A stretch of DNA of 64,000 nucleotides from Bugula neritina (taxonomy: Eukaryota; Animalia; Bryozoa), in NCBI GenBank assembly GCA_964035545.1, contig OZ037765.1, positions 9,434,698-9,498,697 of the forward strand, written 5' to 3'. Both the position numbers and the translations under genes were made by a program. Positions 2,265 through 63,561 of this stretch are shown one piece after another. The notes under the pieces were generated by a model. That model did no database searches. It was not told the origin of the DNA and saw nothing but the letters and a program-made list of their open reading frames with translations. Every line of letters starts with the position of its first letter. Within the stretch, counting starts at the first letter, position 1.

Positions 2265-4783
2265 ATCTACAATAGAAATGACAAGGCTCTATGATAGAGA
2301 CTATCTTCACAGTACTGATTGATGCTATAAAATTTATTTTCACTCAGTATGAGGCAGGTCTAAAAATTTATACAATACTAAGGTGATTGGTGAGCTAGTT
2401 ATAAAACAGCTTAACACCTGTATCTCTTTAGAAAAGTACGTGCTTAAGTGTCATTTTTGCCATTTTTTCAAAAAGTTAACTTGCTAAAAATTAGGTACTG
2501 AAGTTGGTTTATAGTGATTTAAGTTTATAGCATTGTTATTCCGAGCCTTGACTGTTATTACCACCAGCTTCTTTTCACTGGAGCAAGCTAGAACTTCTCA
2601 ATAATAAATAAAGTGGTTTGATAAATTTAAGGTAAACATTAATATTCGCAAGAAAATACATAAATTCAAAAAGCTTTTGATATCAGCATTGTAATACCAT
2701 ACAGACCAAAATATCCTCACATTTTGGAAAATATAACAAAAAATTGAAAGCAACAACTTAAAGTATCAATAGCAGTTATGTATTAAGAGAATGACAATAT
2801 GCTTAAATGCAAAAACTGATTCAGAGCACTAGCCTAGTGTGTTTACTCAACGTTTAACTATATAGTATATACTATATAGCATTTTATAAGTAGAATATTC
2901 AAGAAATTAAAATTTTGTAATTTAAAAATTATGTCTTCTTTTTCTTTACTCACCTAGAATATACTAATTTTTAAAGCTAGAGTGATACTCATACAATAAA
3001 AATAAACACATCACATACTGTTCAAGCCAACTCCAATTTTATTCTAATAATTGTAGCTTTACTATTACATTTATTACTAGTGTTACTATTACTATTAGCT
3101 AATTGAAATTGCCATTAGTATTAGTTACTAGTATGAGTCGTATAATCAACAGCATTATAACTTACGAGTATTACTATAAATAATTAATATTATTACTTCA
3201 AGTTTATCATTATGATTATGGTAATCACTATCAGTGAATCACTTGATGGCTGAATCCTGAAGAAACTTTATAAAATTAGGCATGGCTACCAGTTCTAGTA
3301 GTAGTACAAGTTGAAGTAGTAGAACTTGGTTCAGTACTACTACTACTACTACTACTGCTAAAACTACTAATACATTTACTAATAGTAGTACTAATAGTAA
3401 TACTAATAGTAGAGTACTACTATTACTATTAGTATTAGTATTAGTACTACTAGTACTAGTAGCACTAAGTCAAGCTGCTACTAATAGTAATAGTAATTTG
3501 AGCTGATAGTAATACTAATAGTCATCATAATTTGATAATCACACCCATTATCATTATGGTTAAGATTATAATTATTATTACTATTAGTATTATTAATATT
3601 AATAATAATATTTATATTATATTTATATTTTAATTTATCATCATGATTATCATAATGATAATATTATTAATATTAATAAGATTATCATGTAGCATAATCA
3701 ATATCATTGACATTATGATATTGATTACGATATTAATAATTTAATACTATTACTATTACTATTAGTACGTACAAGATTTATCAATTATAATTACATTTTA
3801 TAACAGCGGAAATGCCCCGATACGAATGTGTATCAGGAAATATGCGCACCCGAATAGATAAATTGGGTGCTTCGCATCAAGACTTTGCACGACATCATTA
3901 CGTTAAACTGTGTCCGTTAAGAAATAGGCGTGGCTAACCATATCTTCATCAAAGTGATCGTTCTTAAAATCATTCTAATTATAGTTTACGTACGACTGTA
4001 ACATATAAACGTCTAGTATAGCCACTTTATATTTTTGCTTGTTACATTCTACAAAAATCACTAGTAGTAGTAGCAGTAGCAGCAGGAGCAGCAGTAGTAG
4101 CAGCAGCAGCAGTAGTAGCAGCAGCAGCAGTAGTAGCAGCAGCACTACTAATACTGTAATAGTAATAATTATAATAATAGTACTTACTTAGTAGTAGCAG
4201 TAGCACTACTAATAGTAATAGTAATACTAGTAGTAGACGTAGTAGTAGCAGTAGTAGTGGGAGTGGCAGCAGCAGCAGCAGCAGTAAAAGTTATAGTAGT
4301 ACAGTAGTAGTAGTAACTCACACTCTTCTTGATCTTCATCTCAATCTTGTGTTGTACTTGTTTTTGGTAGGATTTGTCGTATGTTTGAATAACTATATTC
4401 TATAGCGTAGCGTTTAATTGCACCCCAGCAATGTATAGAAGTTTAGCACATGGCTAAGCTCAGTTTGTGTTATAAGGTAGTACCATCAAATATCTAATGA
4501 TTTGAAAGAGAAAACTGTTTTACTTTGTAGTAGGACTCATACTTATAGTACTCATAGTTTTAATTATCCTGATACTTGTACTCATGATCATTACTATAAA
4601 TGTAATACACATAGTAGCTGCACAGTAGCCGTAGATAGTACCACTACTAGAGTACTATTATTCATACCAGTAGTACTTATACTGGTGGTAGTACTAATAG
4701 ACATAGTACTACTTCTACTACTGCTTGTAGTATTAGACTATCAAAAAAATAATATTAACATATTATTATTAACAGAAGCAATA

Positions 4784-14780: not shown

Positions 14781-15634
14781 TCTACCTAGAAGTGGGGAAA
14801 ACAAAACCAGTAGTCAGCTAGGTACACCATCTTCAATAAAATATTTGCTATTTGGCAATAACTAATAACTATATCAACCGGTTTTTTTTTAATTTTAAAA
14901 GTGACAGTGAAGACACAATTCATCTGCTTAAAATTTAGCAGAAAAAATTTGGTCACTTTTTAGTTTACAGAACATACTCCAGTAAATATTTAGTAGCAAG
15001 TCACATTTTTAAAAATGGAAACACGTGAGTTTAGAATTTACATTAATGCAATATTTTGGCAATGTGTATGTTATTTTATCAAGCAATAAATAGCATTCAA
15101 TAGTGTATTCAACTACCAAAACATTATACTAGAATAACTAGGTGATATACTGATGTCAAAAATATTGTATATGGGCCTATAGTTTAATGGCAGATACAAT
15201 TACATTTAAACAAACAATGGTACAGCAATGTGTGCACTTAAATTTAAAAACACTAATCGTTCTATGATAAGAACTTACAACCTTATAACAAACAAACCGC
15301 TACATAACTGCAGAAAATTGATGCCATGAACAGTTGAATAATATTAATGATGAACGCCTTCCAGTTTGAGTTTCTATGAGAAAATTTTAACAAATTTTAA
15401 TTAGGCATTTGCACAGTTCATTGATTTTCAGAACGAAGATAAAAATTAGATTTATGATATACGGCTATACCAATATTTCATTAGTATTTTAATTTGATTT
15501 TGTATAACTAAGTATTAAGATTCAAGTTTAATAATAATTGTAAGTGTATTAACTTTAAGTACTAGCAGTATCACTACTACTTATTAGTGCAACTAATGTA
15601 ATAGTAATACTAATAATACTATTAGTATTACTAT

Positions 15635-15986
15635 TGTAGTAATTTGTGCAATTACTGAGCGTGAGTTATTTACTTGCGTATAGTTAGCTGGTTATTCTGC
15701 TAGCAATTACTAGGGTAGCTGTCGAGTAATTATATTTATTATCCACAATAAAGCATAAAACAAACATCACATCAAATTATCCTATACATCAGTCAACTAC
15801 TAACACATGTTACTACTTCAAGCCTCCGCTTACAACAACGTGATATAATGTTAATAGCCCGGGAAGTGTCACGTGAATCGGAAGCATATCTTCCGGAGCT
15901 GCTAATTGGTTGCTACATAAGGGCTAAGTATTCCAAGAGTAGGGAGAGGGCGATTCCCGTATTTGTACTTTGCACTACTCACTACA
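15635..15986 (-). repeat. 3' LTR
   Basis: Same sequence as 20552-20903 (offset 4917); preceded on the minus strand by a G-rich PPT. Confidence 0.95.
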
Positions 15987-15996
15987 CCGCCCCCCC
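15987..15996 (-). promoter_or_regulatory. Polypurine tract
   Basis: Minus strand G-run followed by CGG directly abutting the 3' LTR TGTAGT. Confidence 0.8.
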
Positions 15997-16278
15997 AGCA
16001 GAAAGCCCTACTTTCTGATAACACAATAAAAAAACACATAATGAAAAACTATACAATAATCCAAGAAGAAAAACATACATAAGTAAACCCACAAAGAGGA
16101 AGAAAAGAAATAGTTGCACGACAACATTTATGTACAGAAGAAAACAGGGTGATCGATCACACACATCTAGTCAGCTATTAAGAGAGAGGGTGCTTACCAG
16201 CACACGGGCCAATGTCGGAGCACTCGTCACTTCCCAGACGAAATACAGCTCTACGAAGGGTGCCTATCCCAGGCATAC

Positions 16279-17336
16279 TCATTGGGTGGACTCTGACTCT
16301 TGTAGCGAGCGTGCTCTGTGTCGAGCCTGTCGGGCACGTAGCCGCCTCTTCAGTCGCCCCACTGAGTCCTTCAACTGGTATAGACCTGTCGTCGTATCCA
16401 GCAAGTCAGGGGCAAGTTGTGTGAACTCGGCTTGGAGTCTTACAAGCCGCTCTTCTACATTAGCCAACTGGCTAGGCCTTGGCGGGGTTGTAGTAGTCTC
16501 TGTTAGAGGGGGTATTGTTGTTTCTTCTACTTCTGGGGTGTTGCTAGGGTTGACGGGGGTAGGAGACGGGCCCTGAACCATAGGGGACTTATGGCGGGCG
16601 GATAGCAGCAGTACGTGGAACCCTGACGCTAGTGCGGCCAGGGTGATAGCCTTCCTGATGACTGGCTTGATGGCATCCAGGTATAGGGGGAAACTGTCCT
16701 CATCAACAGTGTGGTTCTCTCCGGCGAAGCAACTCAGCTTATGTACTGTCACGGGATACGGGTAGACGTCGTGGAACCCGCAGGGACAGAAGTGGAGTAG
16801 GAAATGGGCGTCTACATGTAAACGCAGGGAGCGGTGTGACGGGCACTCCTCAAAGCAGACCTGGCAGGTTCGGTGGGGTCCACTGGGTCCCCAGGCTTCC
16901 TCAATTCTCCTTTCCGTCGTGGGTGACACCCAACGGTGTCGTCGACGGAGCACCACGGGTATGCCATTCTCCATTACAGGCTCCTCTTCCATAGGCAGAG
17001 AGGTTGGCTGGTCCCGTGACCGGGAGGTGGTCACTCGAGTGTGATCTGAAAGAGTAGCAGTGTTAAAGATTATACACTGAGGTACCGTCGGCGTGTACAG
17101 CCTGACCGGTACTCTGTTCAGTTACACTCGTGAGATTCAGGCTAATGAATAGTTGATGGAGAACACACTCGCTATGACAGATTATTTAAAATCAAAGTCG
17201 ACGTGTATTCCCACCACTGTTTATCATTATCGAATCTCCAGCTCGCTAGCTAGTGTAGCTAAAGCTGACTGATGCAGTCTAGTTATCGTACCAAAAACAT
17301 AATTAACTCACCCTTCGATCCAGAATAGTAAGACAT
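16279..17336 (-). CDS. Accessory ORF3 of the LTR element (about 263 aa, two exons): C2H2 + C2HC zinc fingers, Pro/Thr linker, coiled coil, Arg-rich tail
   Basis: Exon 1 17336-17312 (caaaATG, MSYYSGSK) ending AAGG|GTGAGT; intron 17311-17046 ending ctctttcAG; exon 2 17045-16279 joins in frame (G|AT=Asp) to the 251-aa ORF. CQVC-x12-H-x3-H and CPC-x12-H-x3-C. Confidence 0.75.
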
Positions 17337-17556
17337 TTTGGAATGAGAGCGGTAAATGATTACTGTTTACTGGCACGTCTACTCTTGACTGCATCAACAT
17401 AGGAAAAGACCGGACAGCGTGGTTGTGAAACGTGACTAGGGCTTTTCACTTCCAGTGGATGAATCTCGTGTGAGATTCCGCCGAGGCAAAAGTTGAGATT
17501 TTTGTGGTGATCACAACTCCCACGGCTCTTTGCCTGTTTTCCCATGCGAGGCCTCT

Positions 17557-19719
17557 CTAAACTTTCGTACTGCCGCTTATACCGCGGTCACGTACACAGT
17601 CTCTGAGACACGCTGGAAGTTGCCTAGTGTGTGGTCCTGGTCCTACGTTGGTATCTCCTTGCGGAGCCCCTCCCACGGGGGGTTTTTGCACTTCCGGACC
17701 TGTTTCTGGTTCCGGAAGTGGTGGTGATGGCAGGCTTGACGTTGGGGGCGGTGGGCGCACTTTCAAGGACGGAAGTGGCCTTCCTCGCCTCGCCAAGTCT
17801 TCCTGACGTGTCATGGAGGTGTTTCCGGCCAGGTTGACAGTCTCCGCCTGCCGAGACCTTCTCGCACAATGCGTCTGCCGCCCCGCTTCACCAGGGAGAC
17901 GGCTATGCTTGTTGGTCTGGCAGACTTTGCACCGTCTCACTCTGCGCCGGATATCCCGTTCCATGTTGGGCCAGTACCACCGGAGTTGTAGCTTGGTGAC
18001 CACCCCTTGGACTCCTCCGTGAGTCTCCTCGTGGGTGTCTTGTATCAACTTCCGGCGGATGGCAACTGGGCAGACAACCCTCTTCTTGGCTGGCTGTCTG
18101 CTGTTGGCAACCAAGGTCATGGTCAGCAGACCATCTGGCCCGACCCGCAGAGAGCTCCAACGTTGACAGTACAGCCGTAACTCGGCGCATCCCTGTCGCC
18201 GTTGTTTACTACTGGGTCGTCGCCCTTCCTGTTTCGCTCGGTACACGTCGGCTACCACCCCAGGAAGGCATTCCTGGAGCTTCGGCAGCTCCCTAACGTT
18301 ACCAGCCCATACAGGTTTGGCGCGGAGGCTCTGGACAGCCTCCGGGGGCGTGTCAGCCCTCTGTTGGAGTAGCTGAGCAGGGGCGGTCCTCGCCGCCCGT
18401 GGTACCTCACGACAACCTGCTCTATTTAGGCGGGCTCCGTGGTCTGTGTGGCGGAATGCCTCACTGTACCCATGTGGCAACCTAGCCATAGCCTGGCGCT
18501 TTCCGTTGCCTGTGCAGCCACGTGTCCCTGGAGGAGGGGAGGCGTGGGTTGGGACGGTCCTCCGCCCTCGAGACGGGCTCTGCTGAGGACCTTCCGTCGT
18601 AGCTCCCGACGACGGCCCAATGGCTTCCTCCTGGACAGGATGGAAGCGACCCAGCATGGATCTGGGTGGTAGGTCTACTGTCTCTGAGAAGGGGTTGACA
18701 CACTGCACTGAGATCTCTCCTTGTCCCGTAAGCCGGCTAAAGCTATGGGCAAGTTGGACTCTCGAGTGCGTACTTTCGACAACTCCCAACTTAGAGGTTT
18801 GGCCACCGTCTACCTTGCAGCGGACGGTAGCCCGGGAGTGGCCTGGTATAGTACAGCTCCGTACTACCTGCACTGCTCCCGCTAGAGGACGACCAAACTT
18901 ATCGACACAAGCGAGCTCCTTGTCGCCCATGATCATCGCAGATTTACTGAAATCGATGCGACATCCGTGTCGATGTAAGAATGGCATCCCGAGGATGGCA
19001 TCCTCGTTGAGCTGCCCGACGATAAACGTCTCTTGGATGGCCTGGTTACGGACGTAACCAGTTAGCTCAATAATGCCGTAGAAGGGAATGCACGACCCGT
19101 CTGCCAGGGTGCCATGATCCCCCTCATACGGTGCCAACCCGTCCTTGACCTTAGCGCTGAGGGTGTCAAAGAATTGACGGCTAAGGAGGTTGGTGGTGCA
19201 GCCTGAGTCCAGGAGGAAGTTGGCAGGCTTGCCGGCTAGCTTTCCTGGTAGGAAGTAGCTACTTCCGTGTGGCTGCAGTCGTGTGTGCCGTGGTTGCACC
19301 TCCCTCGCTGTGGGTCGAGGGGTCCACGGTTGGCGGCGACTATTGACCAGCTGCCGAGGTTGGGGCGGTACGCCTTGTGGCGCCTGTACCGTTTCCCTCG
19401 CAGGCTCTGTGGTCAACCGTCTGCCGGCTCCGTGTTGGTGCTGGAGTGGCGTAGAGGACCCAGGCGGCGAGTGGCTTGAGCCTACTTGCCGCGGGGGTCG
19501 CCACTTCACAGCATCTCCGCGCGGCGCCCAGCGGGGCGACAGACGCGCGGGCCTCCCTGGGTGATTCACAGACGGCCCGCAGGAGGTGGGAACATCTGCG
19601 GGCCGTGGTAGTTTAACCCTTGTGGGAGCTGAGGGCAGTTCCCCTGGAAATGTCCTGGCCTTCCGCATCCCCAGCAGAAGTGGTGCCCCATGCCTGGTGA
19701 TTGTACCTGCGGCCCGCAA
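17557..19719 (-). CDS. Internally deleted pol in the -1 frame: aspartic protease, RT N-terminal remnant, integrase HHCC finger; no RT/RNase H/DDE core
   Basis: FLLDSGCTTNLL (D at 19209-19207) and DAILGMPFL; HEETHGG...WYWPNM...CKVC (18033-17920); no YxDD, RNase H or DDE motifs in the 720-codon open frame. Confidence 0.88.
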   Translation of the reverse strand: MRAAGTITRHGAPLLLGMRKARTFPGELPSAPTRVKLPRPADVPTSCGPSVNHPGRPARLSPRWAPRGDAVKWRPPRQVGSSHSPPGSSTPLQHQHGAGRRLTTEPARETVQAPQGVPPQPRQLVNSRRQPWTPRPTAREVQPRHTRLQPHGSSYFLPGKLAGKPANFLLDSGCTTNLLSRQFFDTLSAKVKDGLAPYEGDHGTLADGSCIPFYGIIELTGYVRNQAIQETFIVGQLNEDAILGMPFLHRHGCRIDFSKSAMIMGDKELACVDKFGRPLAGAVQVVRSCTIPGHSRATVRCKVDGGQTSKLGVVESTHSRVQLAHSFSRLTGQGEISVQCVNPFSETVDLPPRSMLGRFHPVQEEAIGPSSGATTEGPQQSPSRGRRTVPTHASPPPGTRGCTGNGKRQAMARLPHGYSEAFRHTDHGARLNRAGCREVPRAARTAPAQLLQQRADTPPEAVQSLRAKPVWAGNVRELPKLQECLPGVVADVYRAKQEGRRPSSKQRRQGCAELRLYCQRWSSLRVGPDGLLTMTLVANSRQPAKKRVVCPVAIRRKLIQDTHEETHGGVQGVVTKLQLRWYWPNMERDIRRRVRRCKVCQTNKHSRLPGEAGRQTHCARRSRQAETVNLAGNTSMTRQEDLARRGRPLPSLKVRPPPPTSSLPSPPLPEPETGPEVQKPPVGGAPQGDTNVGPGPHTRQLPACLRDCVRDRGISGSTKV

Positions 19720-20516
19720 GGCTCACGGGCAGTATCTACCTGGCTTGGGGAAGCTAATGTGGTGACCAGTTTATCTAGCATGTCAGTCATCTGTGCGACT
19801 TTTGACGCTAGTGACATCTGGTTCACATTAGCCACCGCGGAGGGTTCCGCGTTTGGTTCGGCGTGAGCAGTAGTGTGCTCCGTGGTCACCTGGCGGGAGG
19901 CCACGCGGTTGCGGTGCATATGAGTCGCCAAGAGGTAGGCTTCTCCCACCGCAAGTGCATCTTCGACTGTGGTGACTCCCCTCGCTTGGAGTTGATGGTG
20001 GAGCCCCAAGTCGTTGATGGACTGCACGAAGGCATCATAAGTATACCTCTCACGGTGTACTGGAGGCAGATCGCGGATTGCGATCTGCGCTAGTGGGTAC
20101 ACCGTGGCAGCGTGCTCTTCTAGCGACGTGTGAGGATCACGCCGCATCCTTTGTAGACGGGCCCGCGCATCTATGGGAGAGATGCCAAAACGGGCCCGCA
20201 GAGAAGCAAAGATTCCGTCTATGTCAGGTCCCGCTCCGTACGGCTTAGCTTTGCCCGTCAGCGCCATCCTGAGCTTGAGCAACGCCACCCTTGGTGGCCA
20301 CTCTGCAATCTCCATCACATCTTGGAATTCTTGGATAAACTGCTCCACTGCTTCTTCGCCTGTGAAGGTGGGCGCCTTCAGCCGGTATCTGTCTTCACCA
20401 TGCTCTCTAAGAATTCTCACTTCTTCATCTAACACCACTGGTTCCACAGGTATATCAACATTATCTCTCTCACCTTCATTCAGTGGAATGGGTAGCTCCG
20501 TGCCGTCTTCTGCCAT
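19566..20516 (-). CDS. gag: Gag (316 aa): Ty3/Gypsy capsid plus CCHC zinc knuckle
   Basis: ATG at 20516, 17 nt after the PBS; capsid-like FTGEEAVEQFIQEF...WPPRVALLKLRMALTGKAK...LRARFG; zinc knuckle CWGCGRPGHFQGNC (CX2CX4HX4C). Confidence 0.9.
   Translation of the reverse strand: MAEDGTELPIPLNEGERDNVDIPVEPVVLDEEVRILREHGEDRYRLKAPTFTGEEAVEQFIQEFQDVMEIAEWPPRVALLKLRMALTGKAKPYGAGPDIDGIFASLRARFGISPIDARARLQRMRRDPHTSLEEHAATVYPLAQIAIRDLPPVHRERYTYDAFVQSINDLGLHHQLQARGVTTVEDALAVGEAYLLATHMHRNRVASRQVTTEHTTAHAEPNAEPSAVANVNQMSLASKVAQMTDMLDKLVTTLASPSQVDTAREPCGPQVQSPGMGHHFCWGCGRPGHFQGNCPQLPQGLNYHGPQMFPPPAGRL
19572..19617 (-). promoter_or_regulatory. Programmed -1 ribosomal frameshift signal
   Basis: G_UUA_AAC in the gag frame (19617-19611), 4-nt spacer, perfect 11-bp stem ACGGCCCGCAG/CTGCGGGCCGT (19606-19596 with 19582-19572); the pol ORF is exactly -1 to gag. 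Confidence 0.8.
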
Positions 20517-20532
20517 GACTGCTATACGCAAG

Positions 20533-20550
20533 ATCCCACCGCTGCCACCA
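20533..20550 (-). promoter_or_regulatory. Primer binding site complementary to tRNA-Leu 3' end
   Basis: Minus strand TGGTGGCAGCGGTGGGAT, 1 nt inside the 5' LTR; complement of ...ATCCCACCGCTGCCA-CCA, the 3' end of metazoan tRNA-Leu(AAG/TAG). Confidence 0.9.
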
Positions 20551-20551
20551 C

Positions 20552-20903
20552 TGTAGTAATTTGTGCAATTACTGAGCGTGAGTTATTTACTTGCGTATAG
20601 TTAGCTGGTTATTCTGCTAGCAATTACTAGGGTAGCTGTCGAGTAATTATATTTATTATCCACAATAAAGCATAAAACAAACATCACATCAAATTATCCT
20701 ATACATCAGTCAACTACTAACACATGTTACTACTTCAAGCCTCCGCTTACAACAACGTGATATAATGTTAATAGCCCGGGAAGTGTCACGTGAATCGGAA
20801 GCATATCTTCCGGAGCTGCTAATTGGTTGCTACATAAGGGCTAAGTATTCCAAGAGTAGGGAGAGGGCGATTCCCGTATTTGTACTTTGCACTACTCACT
20901 ACA
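20552..20903 (-). repeat. 5' LTR
   Basis: TG...CA termini with 6-bp inverted ends; minus-strand AATAAA at 20657-20652; E-box GTCACGTGA and inverted CGGAAG/CTTCCG pair in U3; adjacent to PBS. Confidence 0.95.
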
Positions 20904-20910
20904 CTATTAG

Positions 20911-24600: not shown

Positions 24601-25420
24601 TGTTTTTAGGTGCCAGGTACCTGGTTAAATTGTGTATTAATTATGGTTGGGTGGGATGGATTGACTTGGTGGGATCTTTTACCAATTTGTCTTTTTACAG
24701 TTTTCAAATTTAATCTTTATATTTCATCTTTCTCCGCCATATCCTGATCGGGTGGCGGCAAGTTTAATCTTTATATTTGAAATAATATAGCTATCTTTTA
24801 CAACTTGAAGTATGTCTCCATTGGACATTTTCATGAAGGCAAATTCCTAAACTCTTTGGCCAATCAGAAGATTTAAAAATCATCTGTCTGTGCAGGTGTT
24901 GCTGTATATGTAAAAAAAGGTGTCATTTTTAAGGTTAGAAAGTTCTAGCAATGTGGACAGATATATTATACAGTTTTTAACTTAACAATTAATATGGTTC
25001 TAGCATACTAAGCATAGTGTATCCTTGTTATGGCTTTTCTAAATGTTAGAGAAAACTTTTTTGCAATCCTAAATAGTTTTTTTTTCTAGTTTTGTATAGA
25101 TAGCTAAATTTAATCGTTTGTGGTAAGGTATAGGAGATCAAATGATGAAAATTGATGTGAATGTTATTAGCCAGAATTTATAAAGTTGTGTTACAATATG
25201 CAAGCATCTATAGCTGTTATGATGCCATTAACTGAAATTATATGCTGGTTGTAATCAAAGCTCTATTTAGAAGTTGTCAATGTAAGCACTGTGCTGAGTT
25301 GTTTTGATCAATTGACCCAATCAATGAGACTCTGCATATATTAGTATTGATTTAAAGTTGCATTTGATTTGCACACGTAAGTGTAGCCATTTTTCCTGGG
25401 TTTCAACTGTTGACTGATAA

Positions 25421-25638
25421 AAAAACTCGCGCAAGTTTATAGTCGCTATCCCTGTGAGAAACCTCTGATGGAAAGGGGTTTTGTTAGAACGGGCTAAGGA
25501 CTTGTTCAAATGAGGCACAGAAGCAATTATGACTGGGTGCTTTTCCTAACATCACCAATGGCCTTTGTCGGGTTCGAACCCACGACTTCGTGTTCACAAA
25601 GCGAACGCTTTAACCCCTAGACCACGGCTGCTTCCTCG
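25421..25638 (-). mobile_element. tRNA-derived SINE (Meta-domain-like core), copy 1
   Basis: Minus strand A box TGGTCTAGGGG, B box GGTTCGAACCC, T-run tail; exact 15-bp TSD ACTGTTGACTGATAA (25406-25420 and 25639-25653); homologous to 38312-38534. Confidence 0.88.
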
Positions 25639-26483
25639 ACTGTTGACTGATAACTTATTTGTAAATTAATTTTTCAGAATTATAACAGTTTTAAGATGTT
25701 TGTCACGTTAGATATTGAGCATGTATGGGAAAATTAACTGTTCTTCCAAAATTGGTAAAATTTTGAAAAATATTTTGGGGCAGCCAGATTGGATTACCAA
25801 AAGATTTCCCAGTTCAATGCTGAATGATTTGTAAACAAGTGTAGTGCTGTATTATATTGTTGGTGTGTGACACACGATTTCGCTGGTTTTTAAATATGTT
25901 ATTTTTTACAGATATTGAAATCCAAGGATGTCTTCGAACACAAGTGATCAAAATGTTAGGTCTAGACGCCCATTGCATAATAAGGATGAATTCACAGCTA
26001 ACTCCTCAGGTGCCTTATTTTATTAATGAATCATAGATTCAGCTCCTCAACAGTTTTGACCATCTACATTGTAGATAGTTGATACTTCCCTGCTCTGTCA
26101 TAAACATAATCGTAGGAAACTTAGGTGATATATGCTATATAAGTAGGGTTAATGTTTAACAGACAGTAAATAGAGTATAAAGCATAATTACCTATATGAT
26201 ATTATGCAATGCAAGACAATCCCCAGCTCTCTAAATCTCTCATTAAGTCAAAAACAGGAAAAAGCTTTTGTCTCAACTAAGGAGTAATCTAATGGTTTGC
26301 ATGACTTTTCTATTGCCGGCATATCAATATCCGCGATCAATAACAGATTACTACTGTTCTTTAAATGAAGTTTACACATTATTTTACACTTTGCCAATCA
26401 TACAACACACTATAGCCTGCACCTGGTTTTTCCCACTACCATGTTTGTTGTGTTGTAATGTGTGACAGTAGCTACTAGCTAAC

Positions 26484-38075: not shown

Positions 38076-39578
38076 ATGGAGCTACCCATAGTTAAAATGC
38101 TCATCCTACTGTTGCTATTTTCTGGAACGTTTATTTTCTCTTTACTTCCTGTTCCGTTGATGAAAGCAGCAACAAACACTGAGAATACAAGGCGTAAAAA
38201 TATGCTTGACAGATGTATCAGGTAGCTATTAACTGTAGGCCTATAATAACAGTGTGAAGCTATTTTTAGTTGAGATGAGAGTTTGTATAAATTATTAGAA
38301 TATTAACATTAGGGAGCAGCTGTGGTCTAGGGGTTAGACTGTTTGCTTAGTGAACACGAAGTCATGGGTGTCGAACCCCGACAAAAGCCATTGGTGATGT
38401 TGGGAAGAGTATCTAGTCATAATTGCTCCTGTGCCTCATCTGAACTAATGCTCAGCCCGATCTAACAAAAACCCCTTCCATCAGAAGTTTTCTAGCGGGA
38501 TAGCGATTATAAACTTGCGCGAGTTTTTTGTTGCTAGAATATTACCACTAACTCAAAATTTGAATGTTAACATGACTAACTTGACTAACTAATGAGGTCT
38601 GATATTCCTTTCAGTTTCCTGAGCTGCTTTGCTGCTGGAGTTTTCCTTGGTACATGCCTACTAGATTTATACCCAGAGGTACAAACAAAATTACATTCTG
38701 CAGTTATGTCGTACATTTCAAAGGACAGCAAGTTTGCCTGCTATCCCTTTGGAGAAGCTGTTATGGTTGCCGGGTTTTTCCTTGTGTTAATAGTCGAGCA
38801 AATGGTGCTAGCATTGAAAGAGATGAGTGTAGAGAGCAGCACTCCAGCCAACCAAAAAGATCAGCCTAGAAGTAGTAGTCAGAGTAAAAGAGTGACTTAT
38901 GATTCTATCAACAGTACAACAAATGAATGCACTGAACATGAAAGACTGTTGGGTAGTAGCTCACATAACAACACACAGTCTAGAAGTCGATTAGGTAGCT
39001 TGTCAAGCATAAGGAGCATCGAGTCAAGGAATAACCTTCACAGTCAGTCTGATGATCAACATGAACATTCAATGCATTATGATCCCAGCTCACACTCACC
39101 CGTAAGGTCATTGATTATGCTGGCAGCATTATCGTTGCACTCTGTGTTTGAAGGCCTTGCAGTTGGTCTCCAAGACACAGAAGAGGGCGTGTTGTCCATT
39201 TTTGGAGCCCTGATACTTCATAAATGCATAATTGCCTTTAGTATTGGGCTTAATCTTGTGCAAAGCAAATTAAGAGTCAAAGCAATAATTGTATCTAATG
39301 CAGTGTTCTGTTTTGCTAGTCCTTTGGGCATAGCCATAGGAATTTTAATTACTGATTTCAATTCTGATGCTGCCACATCACAACTAGTCAATGGAATCCT
39401 TCAAGGTTTAGCATGTGGTACATTCTTATATGTAACCTTTTTTGAAGTTTTACCTCATGAATTTAACAAACCTAAAGATAGACTACTTAAGTTGCTTTTT
39501 GTTATTGTGGGATTTGCATTTGTAAATGGTGTGCTCTTCTTAGAAATGTCTCTTTCAAAAGAGCCTGGCTGTGATTAA
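38076..39578 (+). CDS. ZIP/SLC39 zinc transporter (ZIP1/2/3 type), copy A, about 369 aa
   Basis: Exons 38076-38221 and 38615-39578. FLSCFAAGVFLGTCLLDL, ALSLHSVFEGLAVG, ILHKCIIAFSIG, LQGLACGTFLYVTFFEVLPHE. Confidence 0.93.
38312..38534 (+). mobile_element. tRNA-derived SINE, copy 2, in the ZIP-A intron
   Basis: Homologous to 25421-25638; degenerate 16-bp TSD TAGAATATTAACATTA/TAGAATATTACCACTA (38296-38311 and 38535-38550). Confidence 0.85.
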
Positions 39579-43109: not shown

Positions 43110-45704
<2,595 letters not shown>

Positions 45705-47774: not shown

Positions 47775-49071
47775 ATGGACCTCTCTATCACGAAACTGCT
47801 TATTTTAATATTGTTATTTTTTGGCACATTTATTTTCTCTCTACTTCCTATTCCACTTATGAAAGCAGCAACTAGCGCGCAAAATGAAAGGCGAAAACAA
47901 ATTATGGAAAGACTCATCAGGTACCTACTAAAATAATATTTATTGTTAAGGAAAAGTGACAATAAATTTTATATAGATGATCTATTCAGAATCACTGAAT
48001 TTTACGTAGCTAATTCTTACTATAAGCCTGAAAATTTACAGTAAATACACATTTACTCACCATTTGAACAAATTTGATAACCAATAAGCTAATAGTAAGT
48101 TGCGGTCATTTTCTCTTTGTAGTTTTTTAAGCTGCTTTGCTGCTGGTGTTTTTCTTGGCACATGTCTACTAGATTTATACCCAGAAGTGCAGAGTGAACT
48201 AACAAGCGCAGTTGCACAATACCTATCAACGGATAGCAAGTTCTTCTGCTATCCATTTGGAGAAGCTGTTATGGTTGCTGGCTTTTTTCTTGTACTAATA
48301 ATAGAACAAATGGTATTGGCTTTTAAGGAAAACTCAGACTACACTCTTGAAAATTTGAATAATGGCCAATGTGGAAGTAATGGTTCCCAAAGAAATACCT
48401 ATGGTTCGATGAGAAATACTCATGATGAACCAACGGAAACTGATAGACTGCTAGGAAGTGGTCTACAAGAAGATGCATCTTTAAGTCAACCAAATAGCAT
48501 CTCTAGTATAGAGAGACCTGCAACTTTAGAAAACAATCAAATGTTCTCCAATGCTGATAATCAACATGAACATAATTTCAACTCACACTCACCTATAAAG
48601 TCATTGATTATGCTGGCAGCATTATCGTTGCACTCTGTGTTTGAAGGTCTTGCAGTTGGTCTCCAGCGCACAGAAGGGGGTGTGTTGTCCATTTTTGGAG
48701 CCCTGATACTTCACAAATGCATAATTGCCTTCAGTATTGGGCTTAATCTTGTGCAAAGCAAATTGGCAGTAAAAGCCACTATTGTTTCAAATGCAATATT
48801 TTGTTTTGCTAGTCCTTTGGGCATAGCCATAGGAATTTTAATCACTGAGCTCAACTCTGATACTGACTCATCACTATTGGTCAATGGAATCCTTCAAGGT
48901 TTAGCTTGTGGTACATTCTTATATGTCACTTTTTTTGAAGTTTTACCCAATGAATTCAACAATCCAAAGGATCGACTGTTTAAATTACTGTTTGTTCTTG
49001 TGGGATTTGCTGTTGTAAATGGGGTGATATTTTTAGAATTAGCTCTTTCCAATGAGACTGGATGTGATTAA
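47775..49071 (+). CDS. ZIP/SLC39 zinc transporter, copy B, about 364 aa
   Basis: Exons 47775-47920 (146 nt, as in copy A) and 48123-49071; same TM4/TM5 metal-site motifs. Confidence 0.93.

Positions 49072-49545: not shown

Positions 49546-63561
<14,016 letters not shown>

What the first reader, a model, noticed from the sequence alone, without database searches (positions are those of the whole stretch)
15635..20903. Brand-new, RT-less LTR element that still encodes capsid, protease and an accessory protein
Seen: LTRs identical by eye, perfect TSD, intact PBS/PPT and three uninterrupted ORFs, yet no RT, RNase H or integrase catalytic core. Established: identical LTRs indicate very recent retrotransposition, so RT and IN must come in trans. 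Inference: a selected satellite-type lineage rather than a dead copy. It could build and mature its own Gag particles while borrowing enzymes from a tRNA-Leu-primed helper, comparable to plant TR-GAG elements but also keeping protease, frameshift and a regulator ORF. It may parasitise or interfere with the helper, or form RNA-carrying capsids.
Basis: partly seen in the sequence, partly recalled or inferred. Interest (0 to 1): 0.88.

Follow-up and report, generated by a model that had tools for sequence, protein, structure and literature searches.

The report
RT-less gypsy retrotransposon lineage, bryozoan
This is a very young copy of a gypsy-type jumping gene in a bryozoan (Bugula-like) genome that lost its reverse transcriptase and integrase core long ago, yet has kept spreading and has kept its capsid, protease and a third gene under selection, so it must borrow the missing enzymes from relatives.

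Summary
Window 15635-20903 is a 5,269-bp LTR element on the minus strand. Its two 352-bp LTRs are 352/352 identical and it has a 4-bp target duplication (CTAT). Its 18-nt primer-binding site is the exact complement of the tRNA-Leu(AAG/TAG) 3' end. It has a polypurine tract and three open frames: gag, a 720-codon protease + integrase zinc-finger frame, and ORF3. Reverse transcriptase, RNase H and the integrase core are absent.

The host is a bryozoan close to Bugula neritina.

Six independent, diverged copies (72-83% nt identity) from Bugula-associated assemblies share both deletion junctions. Three copies with readable ends, counting the window, have different target duplications (CTAT, ATAA, TAAG). 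LTR-pair identity ranges from 86% to 100%. These copies group apart from relatives that still carry RT, RNase H or the integrase core and use the same primer-binding site.

dN/dS is about 0.2 for gag, 0.06-0.18 for protease and 0.11-0.14 for ORF3, and about 1 in two spacer stretches.

The element therefore belongs to an old, still active, non-autonomous Ty3/gypsy lineage mobilised in trans. No intact helper was found, no slippery frameshift site was seen, and ORF3's function is unknown. Gag/protease-retaining non-autonomous elements are known in plants, so this is a new animal variant of a known kind.

The parts
15631..15634 (.). Target-site duplication CTAT (flank next to the element's 3' LTR)
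   Evidence: Identical 4-mer at 20904-20907
15635..15986 (-). 3' LTR in element orientation, 352 bp, TG...CA
   Evidence: 352/352 identical to 20552-20903. GC 0.39
15987..15996 (-). Polypurine tract GGGGGGGCGG abutting the 3' LTR
   Evidence: Conserved in L001/L008 and, degraded, in L007
16279..17034 (-). ORF3, 251 codons from GTG (first ATG at 16992). It has a conserved C-x2-C-x12-H-x3-H zinc-finger-like pattern, a long C-terminal helix and an Arg-rich end. Function unknown.
   Evidence: No Pfam family. 135 homologue clusters, mostly about 245 aa. dN/dS 0.11-0.14. AlphaFold2 pLDDT 68, no fold match
17557..19719 (-). ORF2, 720 codons, -1 frame relative to gag: remnant Pol (PR, post-PR, RT/RH deletion, IN zinc finger, IN-core deletion, unselected tail)
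18970..19248 (-). Aspartyl protease domain (ORF2 aa 158-250), active-site LLDSGC
   Evidence: Pfam PF13650/PF13975. Motif conserved in all copies and dN/dS 0.06-0.18
18370..18379 (-). Junction A, where RT and RNase H are missing. About 414 aa of a full-length Pol are lost (P0158 about 441 to 855). The window lineage has a further in-frame 111-nt loss here.
   Evidence: L009 (RT-bearing) matches to the left and L004 (RH/IN-bearing) to the right
17902..18069 (-). Integrase N-terminal HHCC zinc-binding domain (ORF2 aa 551-606)
   Evidence: Pfam PF17921, E 8e-15. H, H, C, C kept in all RT-less copies; dN/dS 0.19-0.41 (0.19 against the near-identical L001, 0.35-0.41 against the diverged copies)
17802..17874 (-). 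Junction B, where the integrase catalytic core and SH3 domain are missing. About 950 bp present in L004 (3580-4527) are absent here.
   Evidence: Sharp end of homology at element nt 3030 against both L004 and L010. L002 is colinear across it
17557..17873 (-). ORF2 tail after junction B, evolving neutrally; the stop codon position varies between copies
   Evidence: dN/dS about 1. L001 reads about 66 codons further
19566..19719 (-). gag/ORF2 overlap (154 nt), presumed -1 recoding region
   Evidence: Frames. No canonical slippery heptamer
19566..20516 (-). gag, 316 aa, with a C-terminal CCHC zinc knuckle
   Evidence: 121 homologue clusters. The knuckle weakly matches retroviral nucleocapsids. dN/dS about 0.2. 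Capsid fold not demonstrated
20533..20550 (-). Primer-binding site, 18 nt, complementary to the tRNA-Leu(AAG/TAG) 3' end
20552..20903 (-). 5' LTR in element orientation
20904..20907 (.). Target-site duplication CTAT

Best explanation
The element is a recently inserted, fully open member of an old non-autonomous sub-lineage of a Ty3/gypsy LTR retrotransposon family. The host is a bugulid bryozoan.

Shown:
- An ancestor lost RT and RNase H in one internal deletion and the integrase core and SH3 domain in a second.
- Descendants carrying both junctions kept inserting over a long time and diverged to 72-83% identity.
- Throughout, gag, protease, the region after protease, the integrase zinc-finger domain and ORF3 stayed under purifying selection. 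Two spacer stretches drifted.

Inferred:
- The element is transcribed from its LTR.
- It makes its own Gag and, by a -1 shift, a Gag-PR-truncated-Pol protein that matures its own particles.
- It makes ORF3 by an unknown route.
- It is reverse-transcribed from a tRNA-Leu primer and integrated by RT, RNase H and integrase supplied in trans by related autonomous elements that use the same primer-binding site.
For: Structure:
- Identical LTRs, TSD, PBS and PPT.
- PR and IN-H2C2 only, no RT, RH or rve.

The same architecture in other copies:
- L001/L008, 97% nt identity.
- L002/L003, L007, L006, L014/L015 and L016/L017, 72-83% nt identity.
- Both junctions are shared at nucleotide level. The window lineage and L006 carry nested secondary losses around junction A.

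Independent insertions over time:
- TSDs CTAT, ATAA and TAAG.
- LTR-pair identity 100% (window), 91% (L014), 86% (L007, L016).

Relatives with the missing domains:
- L009 continues from PR into RT, at 75% nt identity.
- L004 has the RT C-terminus, RH, IN core and the same PBS.
- L010 has RH, IN and an ORF3-like frame.

Trees: the RT-less copies form one side of a branch against L004 + L010, with support 95/98 (gag) and 100/99 (IN zinc-finger region).

Selection: dN/dS with bootstrap intervals below 1 for gag, PR, post-PR, IN zinc finger and ORF3. It is about 1 for the pre-PR spacer and the tail.

Youth: CpG o/e is 0.76 inside the element against 0.41 in the host flanks.
Against: - No intact autonomous element was recovered. 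The RT/IN-bearing relatives are fragments or other deletion derivatives on short contigs.
- There are no expression, particle or mobilisation data.
- There is no canonical slippery site in the overlap.
- L002 and L007 carry frame-breaking indels before PR, so only the window/L001/L008 group shows the intact -1 arrangement.
- The comparison copies come from short-read assemblies of a sister species: host synteny is only 88-89% identical.
- The trees are unrooted and have only two or three RT/IN-bearing outgroup rows.
- Recombination with autonomous relatives could carry part of the selection signal.
- LTR identity cannot be checked against reads.
Confidence: 0.8

Rival explanations
1. A one-off, dead-on-arrival deletion derivative of a near-identical autonomous element, with no lineage of its own.
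For: Internal deletions are common in this family. L004 and L010 are other deletion types.
Against: Six diverged copies share both junctions, have different TSDs and have LTR pairs of different ages. Selection is seen between RT-less copies.
Confidence: 0.03
2. The same deletions arise again and again from autonomous masters, for example by template switching at hot spots. RT-less copies would then be short-lived by-products, and the selection signal would come from the autonomous context.
For: Only two or three RT/IN-bearing rows were available, the trees are unrooted, and the family is visibly deletion-prone.
Against: Both junctions coincide at nucleotide level in lineages 17-28% apart, and later losses are nested around junction A. 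RT-less copies group together in gag and in the IN zinc-finger region. All six elements sampled with both gag and ORF3 on one contig are of this type.
Confidence: 0.1
3. An assembly artefact: LTR identity, or the whole deleted structure, produced by collapse or chimerism.
For: Short-read contig L008 is circularly permuted through the LTR (ORF3-LTR-gag) and L001 has an inverted fragment at its 5' end. So LTRs do confuse assemblers.
Against: The internal structure is reproduced in independent assemblies of two samples and in the window. The flanks give a clean TSD and a continuous empty site.
Confidence: 0.03
4. A host-domesticated gag/protease gene cluster rather than a mobile element.
For: There is purifying selection on gag, PR and ORF3.
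Against: The element has intact identical LTRs, PBS, PPT and TSD. There are more than 100 diverged homologue clusters each for gag and for ORF3, and copies sit at different sites.
Confidence: 0.02

Closest known systems
Autonomous Ty3/gypsy (Metaviridae) LTR retrotransposons of animals, e.g. the 1,499-aa Pol P0158
   Same: LTR-PBS-gag-PR...IN-PPT-LTR layout, TG...CA ends and a 4-bp TSD. Protease and post-protease region are 29% identical and the IN zinc-finger region 32% identical to P0158. CCHC knuckle in gag.
   Different: It lacks RT, RNase H, the integrase core and the SH3 domain. It carries an extra ORF3 with no known family.
Plant TR-GAG elements and the GAG/PROT-retaining non-autonomous LTR families described in sugar beet (PMC13570524)
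   Same: Non-autonomous LTR elements that keep a gag ORF, or gag plus protease, and lack the replication enzymes. They form families and presumably use helpers in trans.
   Different: The host is an animal (bryozoan). The element also keeps an integrase zinc-finger domain and a third ORF, both under selection, and it is larger (5.3 kb). No sequence relationship to the plant elements was tested.
LARDs and TRIMs, including animal TRIMs in ants and bivalves (PMC3532108, PMC6934838)
   Same: Non-autonomous LTR retrotransposons mobilised in trans; such elements are known in animals.
   Different: LARDs and TRIMs have no coding capacity. This element has three selected ORFs.
Mammalian helper-dependent pairs such as ETn/MusD and deleted IAP elements (from my own knowledge, not tested here)
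   Same: Internally deleted LTR elements that outnumber or out-transpose their autonomous partners and rely on them in trans.
   Different: They belong to a different superfamily (ERV class II). ETn is non-coding. No homology is implied.

Membership tests
Ty3/gypsy LTR retrotransposon (by descent) | Direct LTRs with TG...CA ends flanked by a short TSD | tested here: met
   352-bp LTRs, 100% identical, TG...CA, 4-bp TSD CTAT
Ty3/gypsy LTR retrotransposon (by descent) | tRNA-complementary PBS next to the 5' LTR and a PPT next to the 3' LTR | tested here: met
   18/18 complement of the tRNA-Leu(AAG/TAG) 3' end; G-rich PPT
Ty3/gypsy LTR retrotransposon (by descent) | Pol domain order PR-RT-RH-IN, with IN after RT | tested here: met
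   PR lies before the IN zinc finger in the element. Relatives fill the gap in that order: L009 PR to RT, L004 RT-C, RH, IN
Autonomous LTR retrotransposon | Encodes reverse transcriptase and RNase H | tested here: not met
   No RVT_1 or RNase H by Pfam or by tblastn with P0158
Autonomous LTR retrotransposon | Encodes the integrase DDE catalytic core | tested here: not met
   No rve. Homology to L004 and L010 stops at element nt 3030, just before the core
TR-GAG (plants) | LTR/PBS/PPT frame with gag as the only coding domain | tested here: not met
   gag is present, but so are a protease, an IN zinc finger and ORF3
TR-GAG (plants) | Lacks RT, RH and IN enzymes and depends on a helper | tested here: inconclusive
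   The enzymes are absent. Dependence on a helper is inferred, not demonstrated.
LARD / TRIM | No protein-coding capacity in the internal region | tested here: not met
   Three open frames under purifying selection
Env-carrying gypsy elements (errantivirus-like) | The third ORF encodes an envelope glycoprotein | tested here: inconclusive
   ORF3 is only about 240 aa, has no Pfam family and no fold match. The model shows a zinc-finger-like domain plus a long helix. Nothing env-like was seen, but no signal-peptide or transmembrane predictor was run.
Propagating non-autonomous lineage (as opposed to a dead copy) | Several copies with the same deletion junctions, at different sites, of different ages | tested here: met
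   Six lineages; TSDs CTAT, ATAA, TAAG; LTR-pair identity 86-100%
Propagating non-autonomous lineage (as opposed to a dead copy) | Purifying selection on the retained ORFs between copies that share the deletion | tested here: met
   dN/dS: gag 0.20-0.23, PR 0.12-0.18, ORF3 0.11-0.14, with bootstrap intervals below 1
Propagating non-autonomous lineage (as opposed to a dead copy) | An intact autonomous partner with matching LTR/PBS in the same genome | tested here: inconclusive
   RT-, RH- and IN-bearing relatives with the same PBS exist in the sister-species assemblies, but only as fragments or other deletion types. The window's own genome could not be searched.

The most novel reading that the evidence does not exclude
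A retroelement 'satellite' in an animal. It would build and mature its own capsids and keep an integrase zinc-finger fragment and a zinc-finger/coiled-coil ORF3 as working modules for capturing a helper's RT and integrase. It may also move between sibling bryozoan species: the element is 97% identical between the window and the sister-species assemblies, whereas the host loci are 88-89% identical.
Probability: 0.3. Interest if true: 0.7.

Novelty: new variant of a known kind. Interest (0 to 1): 0.5.

Why it matters
Non-autonomous LTR elements are usually treated as decaying, non-coding passengers. Here a lineage without RT and without an integrase core has persisted and diversified while selection kept capsid, protease, an integrase fragment and an extra ORF. 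This indicates which functions such an element must supply for itself and which it can borrow. It extends to animals (Bryozoa) a pattern documented so far mainly in plants. It also offers a natural system for studying trans-complementation, particle sharing and possible interference between retroelements. The selected but uncharacterised ORF3 family is a candidate new retroelement accessory protein.

Tried and rejected
- Exact look-up of the three ORFs and two host ORFs in the protein collection found none.
- A scan of metagenome contigs with a gag profile gave 153 pattern matches but no true relative. The Bugula samples are evidently not in that collection.
- tRNA and Rfam scans of the window, and a tRNA scan of the loci, found nothing. 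So the tRNA-Leu assignment rests on a published human tRNA-Leu 3' fragment, not on a bryozoan tRNA gene.
- Paper searches for the JGI sample numbers and for the SRA run found nothing.
- The AlphaFold2 model of gag from a 13-row alignment was too poor (pLDDT 41) to test for a capsid fold, so it was not searched.
- The ORF3 model (pLDDT 68) gave no significant match in PDB or BFVD; the best E values were 1.8 and 0.77.
- A search for a canonical slippery heptamer in the gag/ORF2 overlap found none.
- The idea that L002 and L007 use a +1 frame by design was rejected. Their frame change comes from two different indels (13 nt and 1 nt) in the neutral spacer.
- The host contig L013 ends 5 kb upstream of the ZIP gene, so an empty-site test in the sister species was not possible.
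- The alignment tools printed majority-consensus lines for gag and ORF3 as an automatic by-product. I did not use or reproduce them.
Full report
**1. What is in the window**

A direct-repeat search finds one long repeat pair around the stated coordinates. Exact comparison shows that 15635-15986 and 20552-20903 are identical at all 352 positions. They begin with TG, end with CA, and lie between two copies of CTAT at 15631-15634 and 20904-20907. The duplication is 4 bp, not 5.

The local (TATTAG/TATTAC)n repeat runs straight across the reconstructed empty site. That fits a clean insertion, though a 4-bp match in such sequence is weak evidence on its own.

All long open frames lie on the minus strand, so the element reads right to left. 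In that orientation:
- The 5' LTR is followed, after one base, by TGGTGGCAGCGGTGGGAT.
- The 3' LTR is preceded by GGGGGGGCGG.
- The 18-nt site is the exact reverse complement of AUCCCACCGCUGCCACCA. PMC8698603 lists that sequence as the 3' fragment of nuclear tRNA-Leu(AAG/TAG).

No bryozoan tRNA gene was available for comparison.

The internal region has 56% G+C and the LTRs 39%, in a host sequence of 32%.

**2. Coding content**

- gag is 316 aa from its first ATG (19566-20516). It has no Pfam family. Its C-terminal C-x2-C-x4-H-x4-C knuckle gives weak matches to retroviral nucleocapsid knuckles.
- ORF2 (17557-19719) lies in the -1 frame and overlaps gag by 154 nt. That frame is open from 157 nt before the gag stop to 2,009 nt after it.
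- Pfam finds an aspartyl protease at aa 158-250 (active site LLDSGC) and the integrase HHCC zinc-binding domain at aa 551-606. It finds nothing else.
- ORF3 (16279-17034) has no family.
- The 720-codon frame is far longer than any frame in shuffled sequence of the same composition (maximum 268 codons).
- No X XXY YYZ heptamer lies in the overlap. The frameshift is therefore inferred from the frame arrangement alone.

**3. What is missing, and where**

An exhaustive protein search with ORF2 found full-length gypsy Pol proteins at about 30% identity. Against one of them, P0158 (PR, RT, RNase H, IN zinc finger, IN core, SH3):
- ORF2 aa 155-422 align to residues 139-404.
- ORF2 aa 489-632 align to residues 914-1055.

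RT (472-631) and RNase H (695-823) fall in the gap. The integrase core and SH3 domain lie beyond the end of the second match.

Closer relatives fix the junctions:
- L009 matches the element at 75% nt identity through protease and then continues into RT.
- L004 matches from element nt 2534 onward through the zinc finger and then continues into the integrase core.
- Homology to L004 and to L010 stops sharply at element nt 3030. It resumes at nt 3102, after about 950 bp that only L004 has.

In window coordinates, junction A is at about 18370-18379 and junction B at 17802-17874.

**4. Host**

The window has few long frames. It carries two tandem intronless ZIP zinc-transporter genes at 38592-39578 and 48100-49071.
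- The best named homologue is from the bryozoan Watersipora subatra (60% identity).
- Other lophotrochozoans follow at 45-50%.
- An unnamed JGI protein is 94% identical.

All close relatives of the element come from two JGI samples whose scaffold names carry AY690838. That is the accession of the Bugula neritina mitochondrial genome.

A 16-kb contig from one of those samples is syntenic with window 32.8-50.2 kb at only 88-89% nt identity. I conclude that the window comes from a bugulid bryozoan closely related to, but not the same as, the animal in those samples.

**5. Is it a lineage?**

gag has 121 homologue clusters and ORF3 has 135, almost all from those samples. Six independent elements have the window's architecture, colinear with it through both junctions:

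| Copies | nt identity to the window element |
|---|---|
| L001/L008 | 97% |
| L002/L003 | 79-83% |
| L007 | about 81% |
| L006 | 76-81% |
| L014/L015 | 68-73% |
| L016/L017 | 71-77% |

Junction A in detail:
- L002 and L007 are colinear with each other across junction A. In L002 the left homology (to P0158 residue 441) and the right homology (to L004 nt 3004) meet within a few bases.
- The window lineage lacks a further 111 nt there, in frame.
- L006 lacks about 490 nt.

This is the pattern expected from one old deletion followed by erosion of now useless sequence.

Insertions are independent and of different ages. TSDs are CTAT (window), ATAA (L007) and TAAG (L016). LTR pairs are 100%, 91% (L014) and 86% (L007, L016) identical.

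In maximum-likelihood trees the RT-less copies form one side of a branch against the RT/IN-bearing relatives L004 and L010. Support is 95/98 for gag and 100/99 for the zinc-finger region. In the protease region the RT-bearing L009 lies outside them. The trees are unrooted and the outgroup rows are few.

**6. Selection**

These are Nei-Gojobori estimates between the window copy and L002, L007 and L006:

| Region | dN/dS |
|---|---|
| gag | 0.20-0.23 |
| protease | 0.12-0.18 |
| region after protease | 0.34-0.46 |
| IN zinc-finger region | 0.35-0.41 |
| ORF3 | 0.11-0.14 |
| spacer before protease | 0.74-0.88 |
| tail after junction B | about 1.0 |

- For the first five regions at most 0.4% of bootstrap replicates reach 1. 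The last two are not distinguishable from 1.
- The same pattern holds between L002 and L007. It also holds at shallow depth between the window and L001, where protease gives 0.06.
- DSG, the ILGMPFL motif and the H, H, C, C residues are kept in every copy.
- Older copies carry stops and indels. These bias the estimates toward 1, so the test is conservative.
- L002 and L007 each have a different frame-breaking deletion in the neutral spacer (13 nt and 1 nt). The intact -1 arrangement is seen in the window, L001, L008 and, by frame, in L006.

**7. The helper question**

The same assemblies hold relatives with the missing domains:
- L009: PR to RT.
- L004/L005: gag N-terminus joined to the RT C-terminus, then RNase H, IN zinc finger, IN core and SH3.
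- L010: gag joined to the RNase H C-terminus, then a complete IN and an ORF3-like frame at 39% identity.

L004 has the same primer-binding site and the same one-base spacer. ORF3 therefore belongs to the ancestral family and is not an acquisition of the RT-less lineage.

None of these relatives is an intact autonomous element. The contigs are short and two of them are themselves deletion derivatives. No RT is present elsewhere in the 64-kb window. A helper is required by logic but was not found intact.

**8. ORF3**

In 35 aligned homologues the pattern C-x2-C-x12-H-x3-H is nearly invariant, as is a second Cys/His cluster. An AlphaFold2 model (pLDDT 68, pTM 0.42) shows:
- a small N-terminal alpha/beta domain;
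- helices at 98-135;
- a disordered linker;
- a 60-residue C-terminal helix ending in an arginine-rich stretch.

Foldseek found nothing significant in PDB or BFVD. The top weak matches include C2H2 zinc fingers. A nucleic-acid-binding, oligomerising accessory protein is a reasonable guess, but no more than that.

**9. Comparison with known systems**

By descent this is a Ty3/gypsy element. By function it is non-autonomous.
- It is not a LARD or TRIM, which are non-coding.
- It fails the strict TR-GAG definition, in which gag is the only coding domain.
- The closest described things are the plant non-autonomous families that retain GAG/PROT. Twenty-eight such families were recently reported in sugar beet and likened to TR-GAGs (PMC13570524).
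- My searches of the paper library surfaced only non-coding TRIM-type non-autonomous LTR elements in animals (ants, bivalves) and small-RNA-derived groups. That search was not exhaustive.

The kind is therefore known. The new parts are the animal host, the retained and selected integrase zinc finger and ORF3, and the demonstrable age and continued activity of the lineage.

**10. Verdict**

Still open:
- the identity and integrity of the helper;
- the recoding mechanism;
- whether Gag forms particles;
- what ORF3 and the integrase fragment do;
- whether the 97% element identity against 88-89% host identity reflects transfer between sibling species.

Noticed in passing
window 15635-20903 versus L001/L008; window 32.8-50.2 kb versus L013: The element is 97% identical between the window and the JGI Bugula samples (LTR 96-97%, dS 0.04-0.13). 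The syntenic host region is only 88-89% identical. This may reflect horizontal transfer or introgression between sibling bryozoan species, or mixed animals in the sample.
   Followed up: partly
window 15599-15634 and L002 5361-5400: The window copy and L002 are both inserted into the same kind of (TATTAG/TATTAC)n microsatellite-like sequence, which is common throughout the window. This could be a target preference or simply the abundance of that repeat.
   Followed up: no
window 29.2-32.0 kb / 39.9-42.3 kb and 38.1-39.6 kb / 47.8-49.1 kb: There is a segmental duplication of about 10 kb (73-97% identity) that includes two tandem intronless ZIP zinc-transporter genes (38592-39578 and 48100-49071). 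The same tandem pair is present in the sister-species contig L013.
   Followed up: partly
window 43208-45620: An extremely A+T-rich block (12% G+C) of (TA)n and degenerate 280-bp repeats is bounded by 346-nt inverted arms that are 90% complementary. It looks like a foldback or palindromic structure of unknown nature.
   Followed up: no
window 25420-25639 and 38311-38529; L004 1-159: A repeat of about 150-220 nt is present twice in the window in inverted orientation. It also occurs at the end of contig L004 (87-92% identity). It is a dispersed short repeat family, possibly MITE- or SINE-like.
   Followed up: no
L008 1-4770 and L001 1-151: Contig L008 is circularly permuted (ORF3-LTR-gag-ORF2). 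L001 begins with an inverted fragment of an element's 3' end. These are either tandem or nested element arrays or short-read assembly through shared LTRs.
   Followed up: no
window 16279-17034 versus L002/L007: Synonymous divergence of ORF3 (dS 1.4-1.6) is about three times that of gag and PR (about 0.5) for the same pairs of copies. This suggests recombination between sub-lineages or a different mutational regime in the 3' part.
   Followed up: no
window 60666-60873 and 61206-61491: There are two short tandem arrays, (ACGTATGT/GCATGTAT)n-like with a 12-nt period and an 8-10-nt period array, near the right end of the window.
   Followed up: no
window, whole: CpG observed/expected is 0.41 in host sequence but 0.76-0.84 in the element. 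This is consistent with a CpG-depleting (methylating) genome and a young element.
   Followed up: partly
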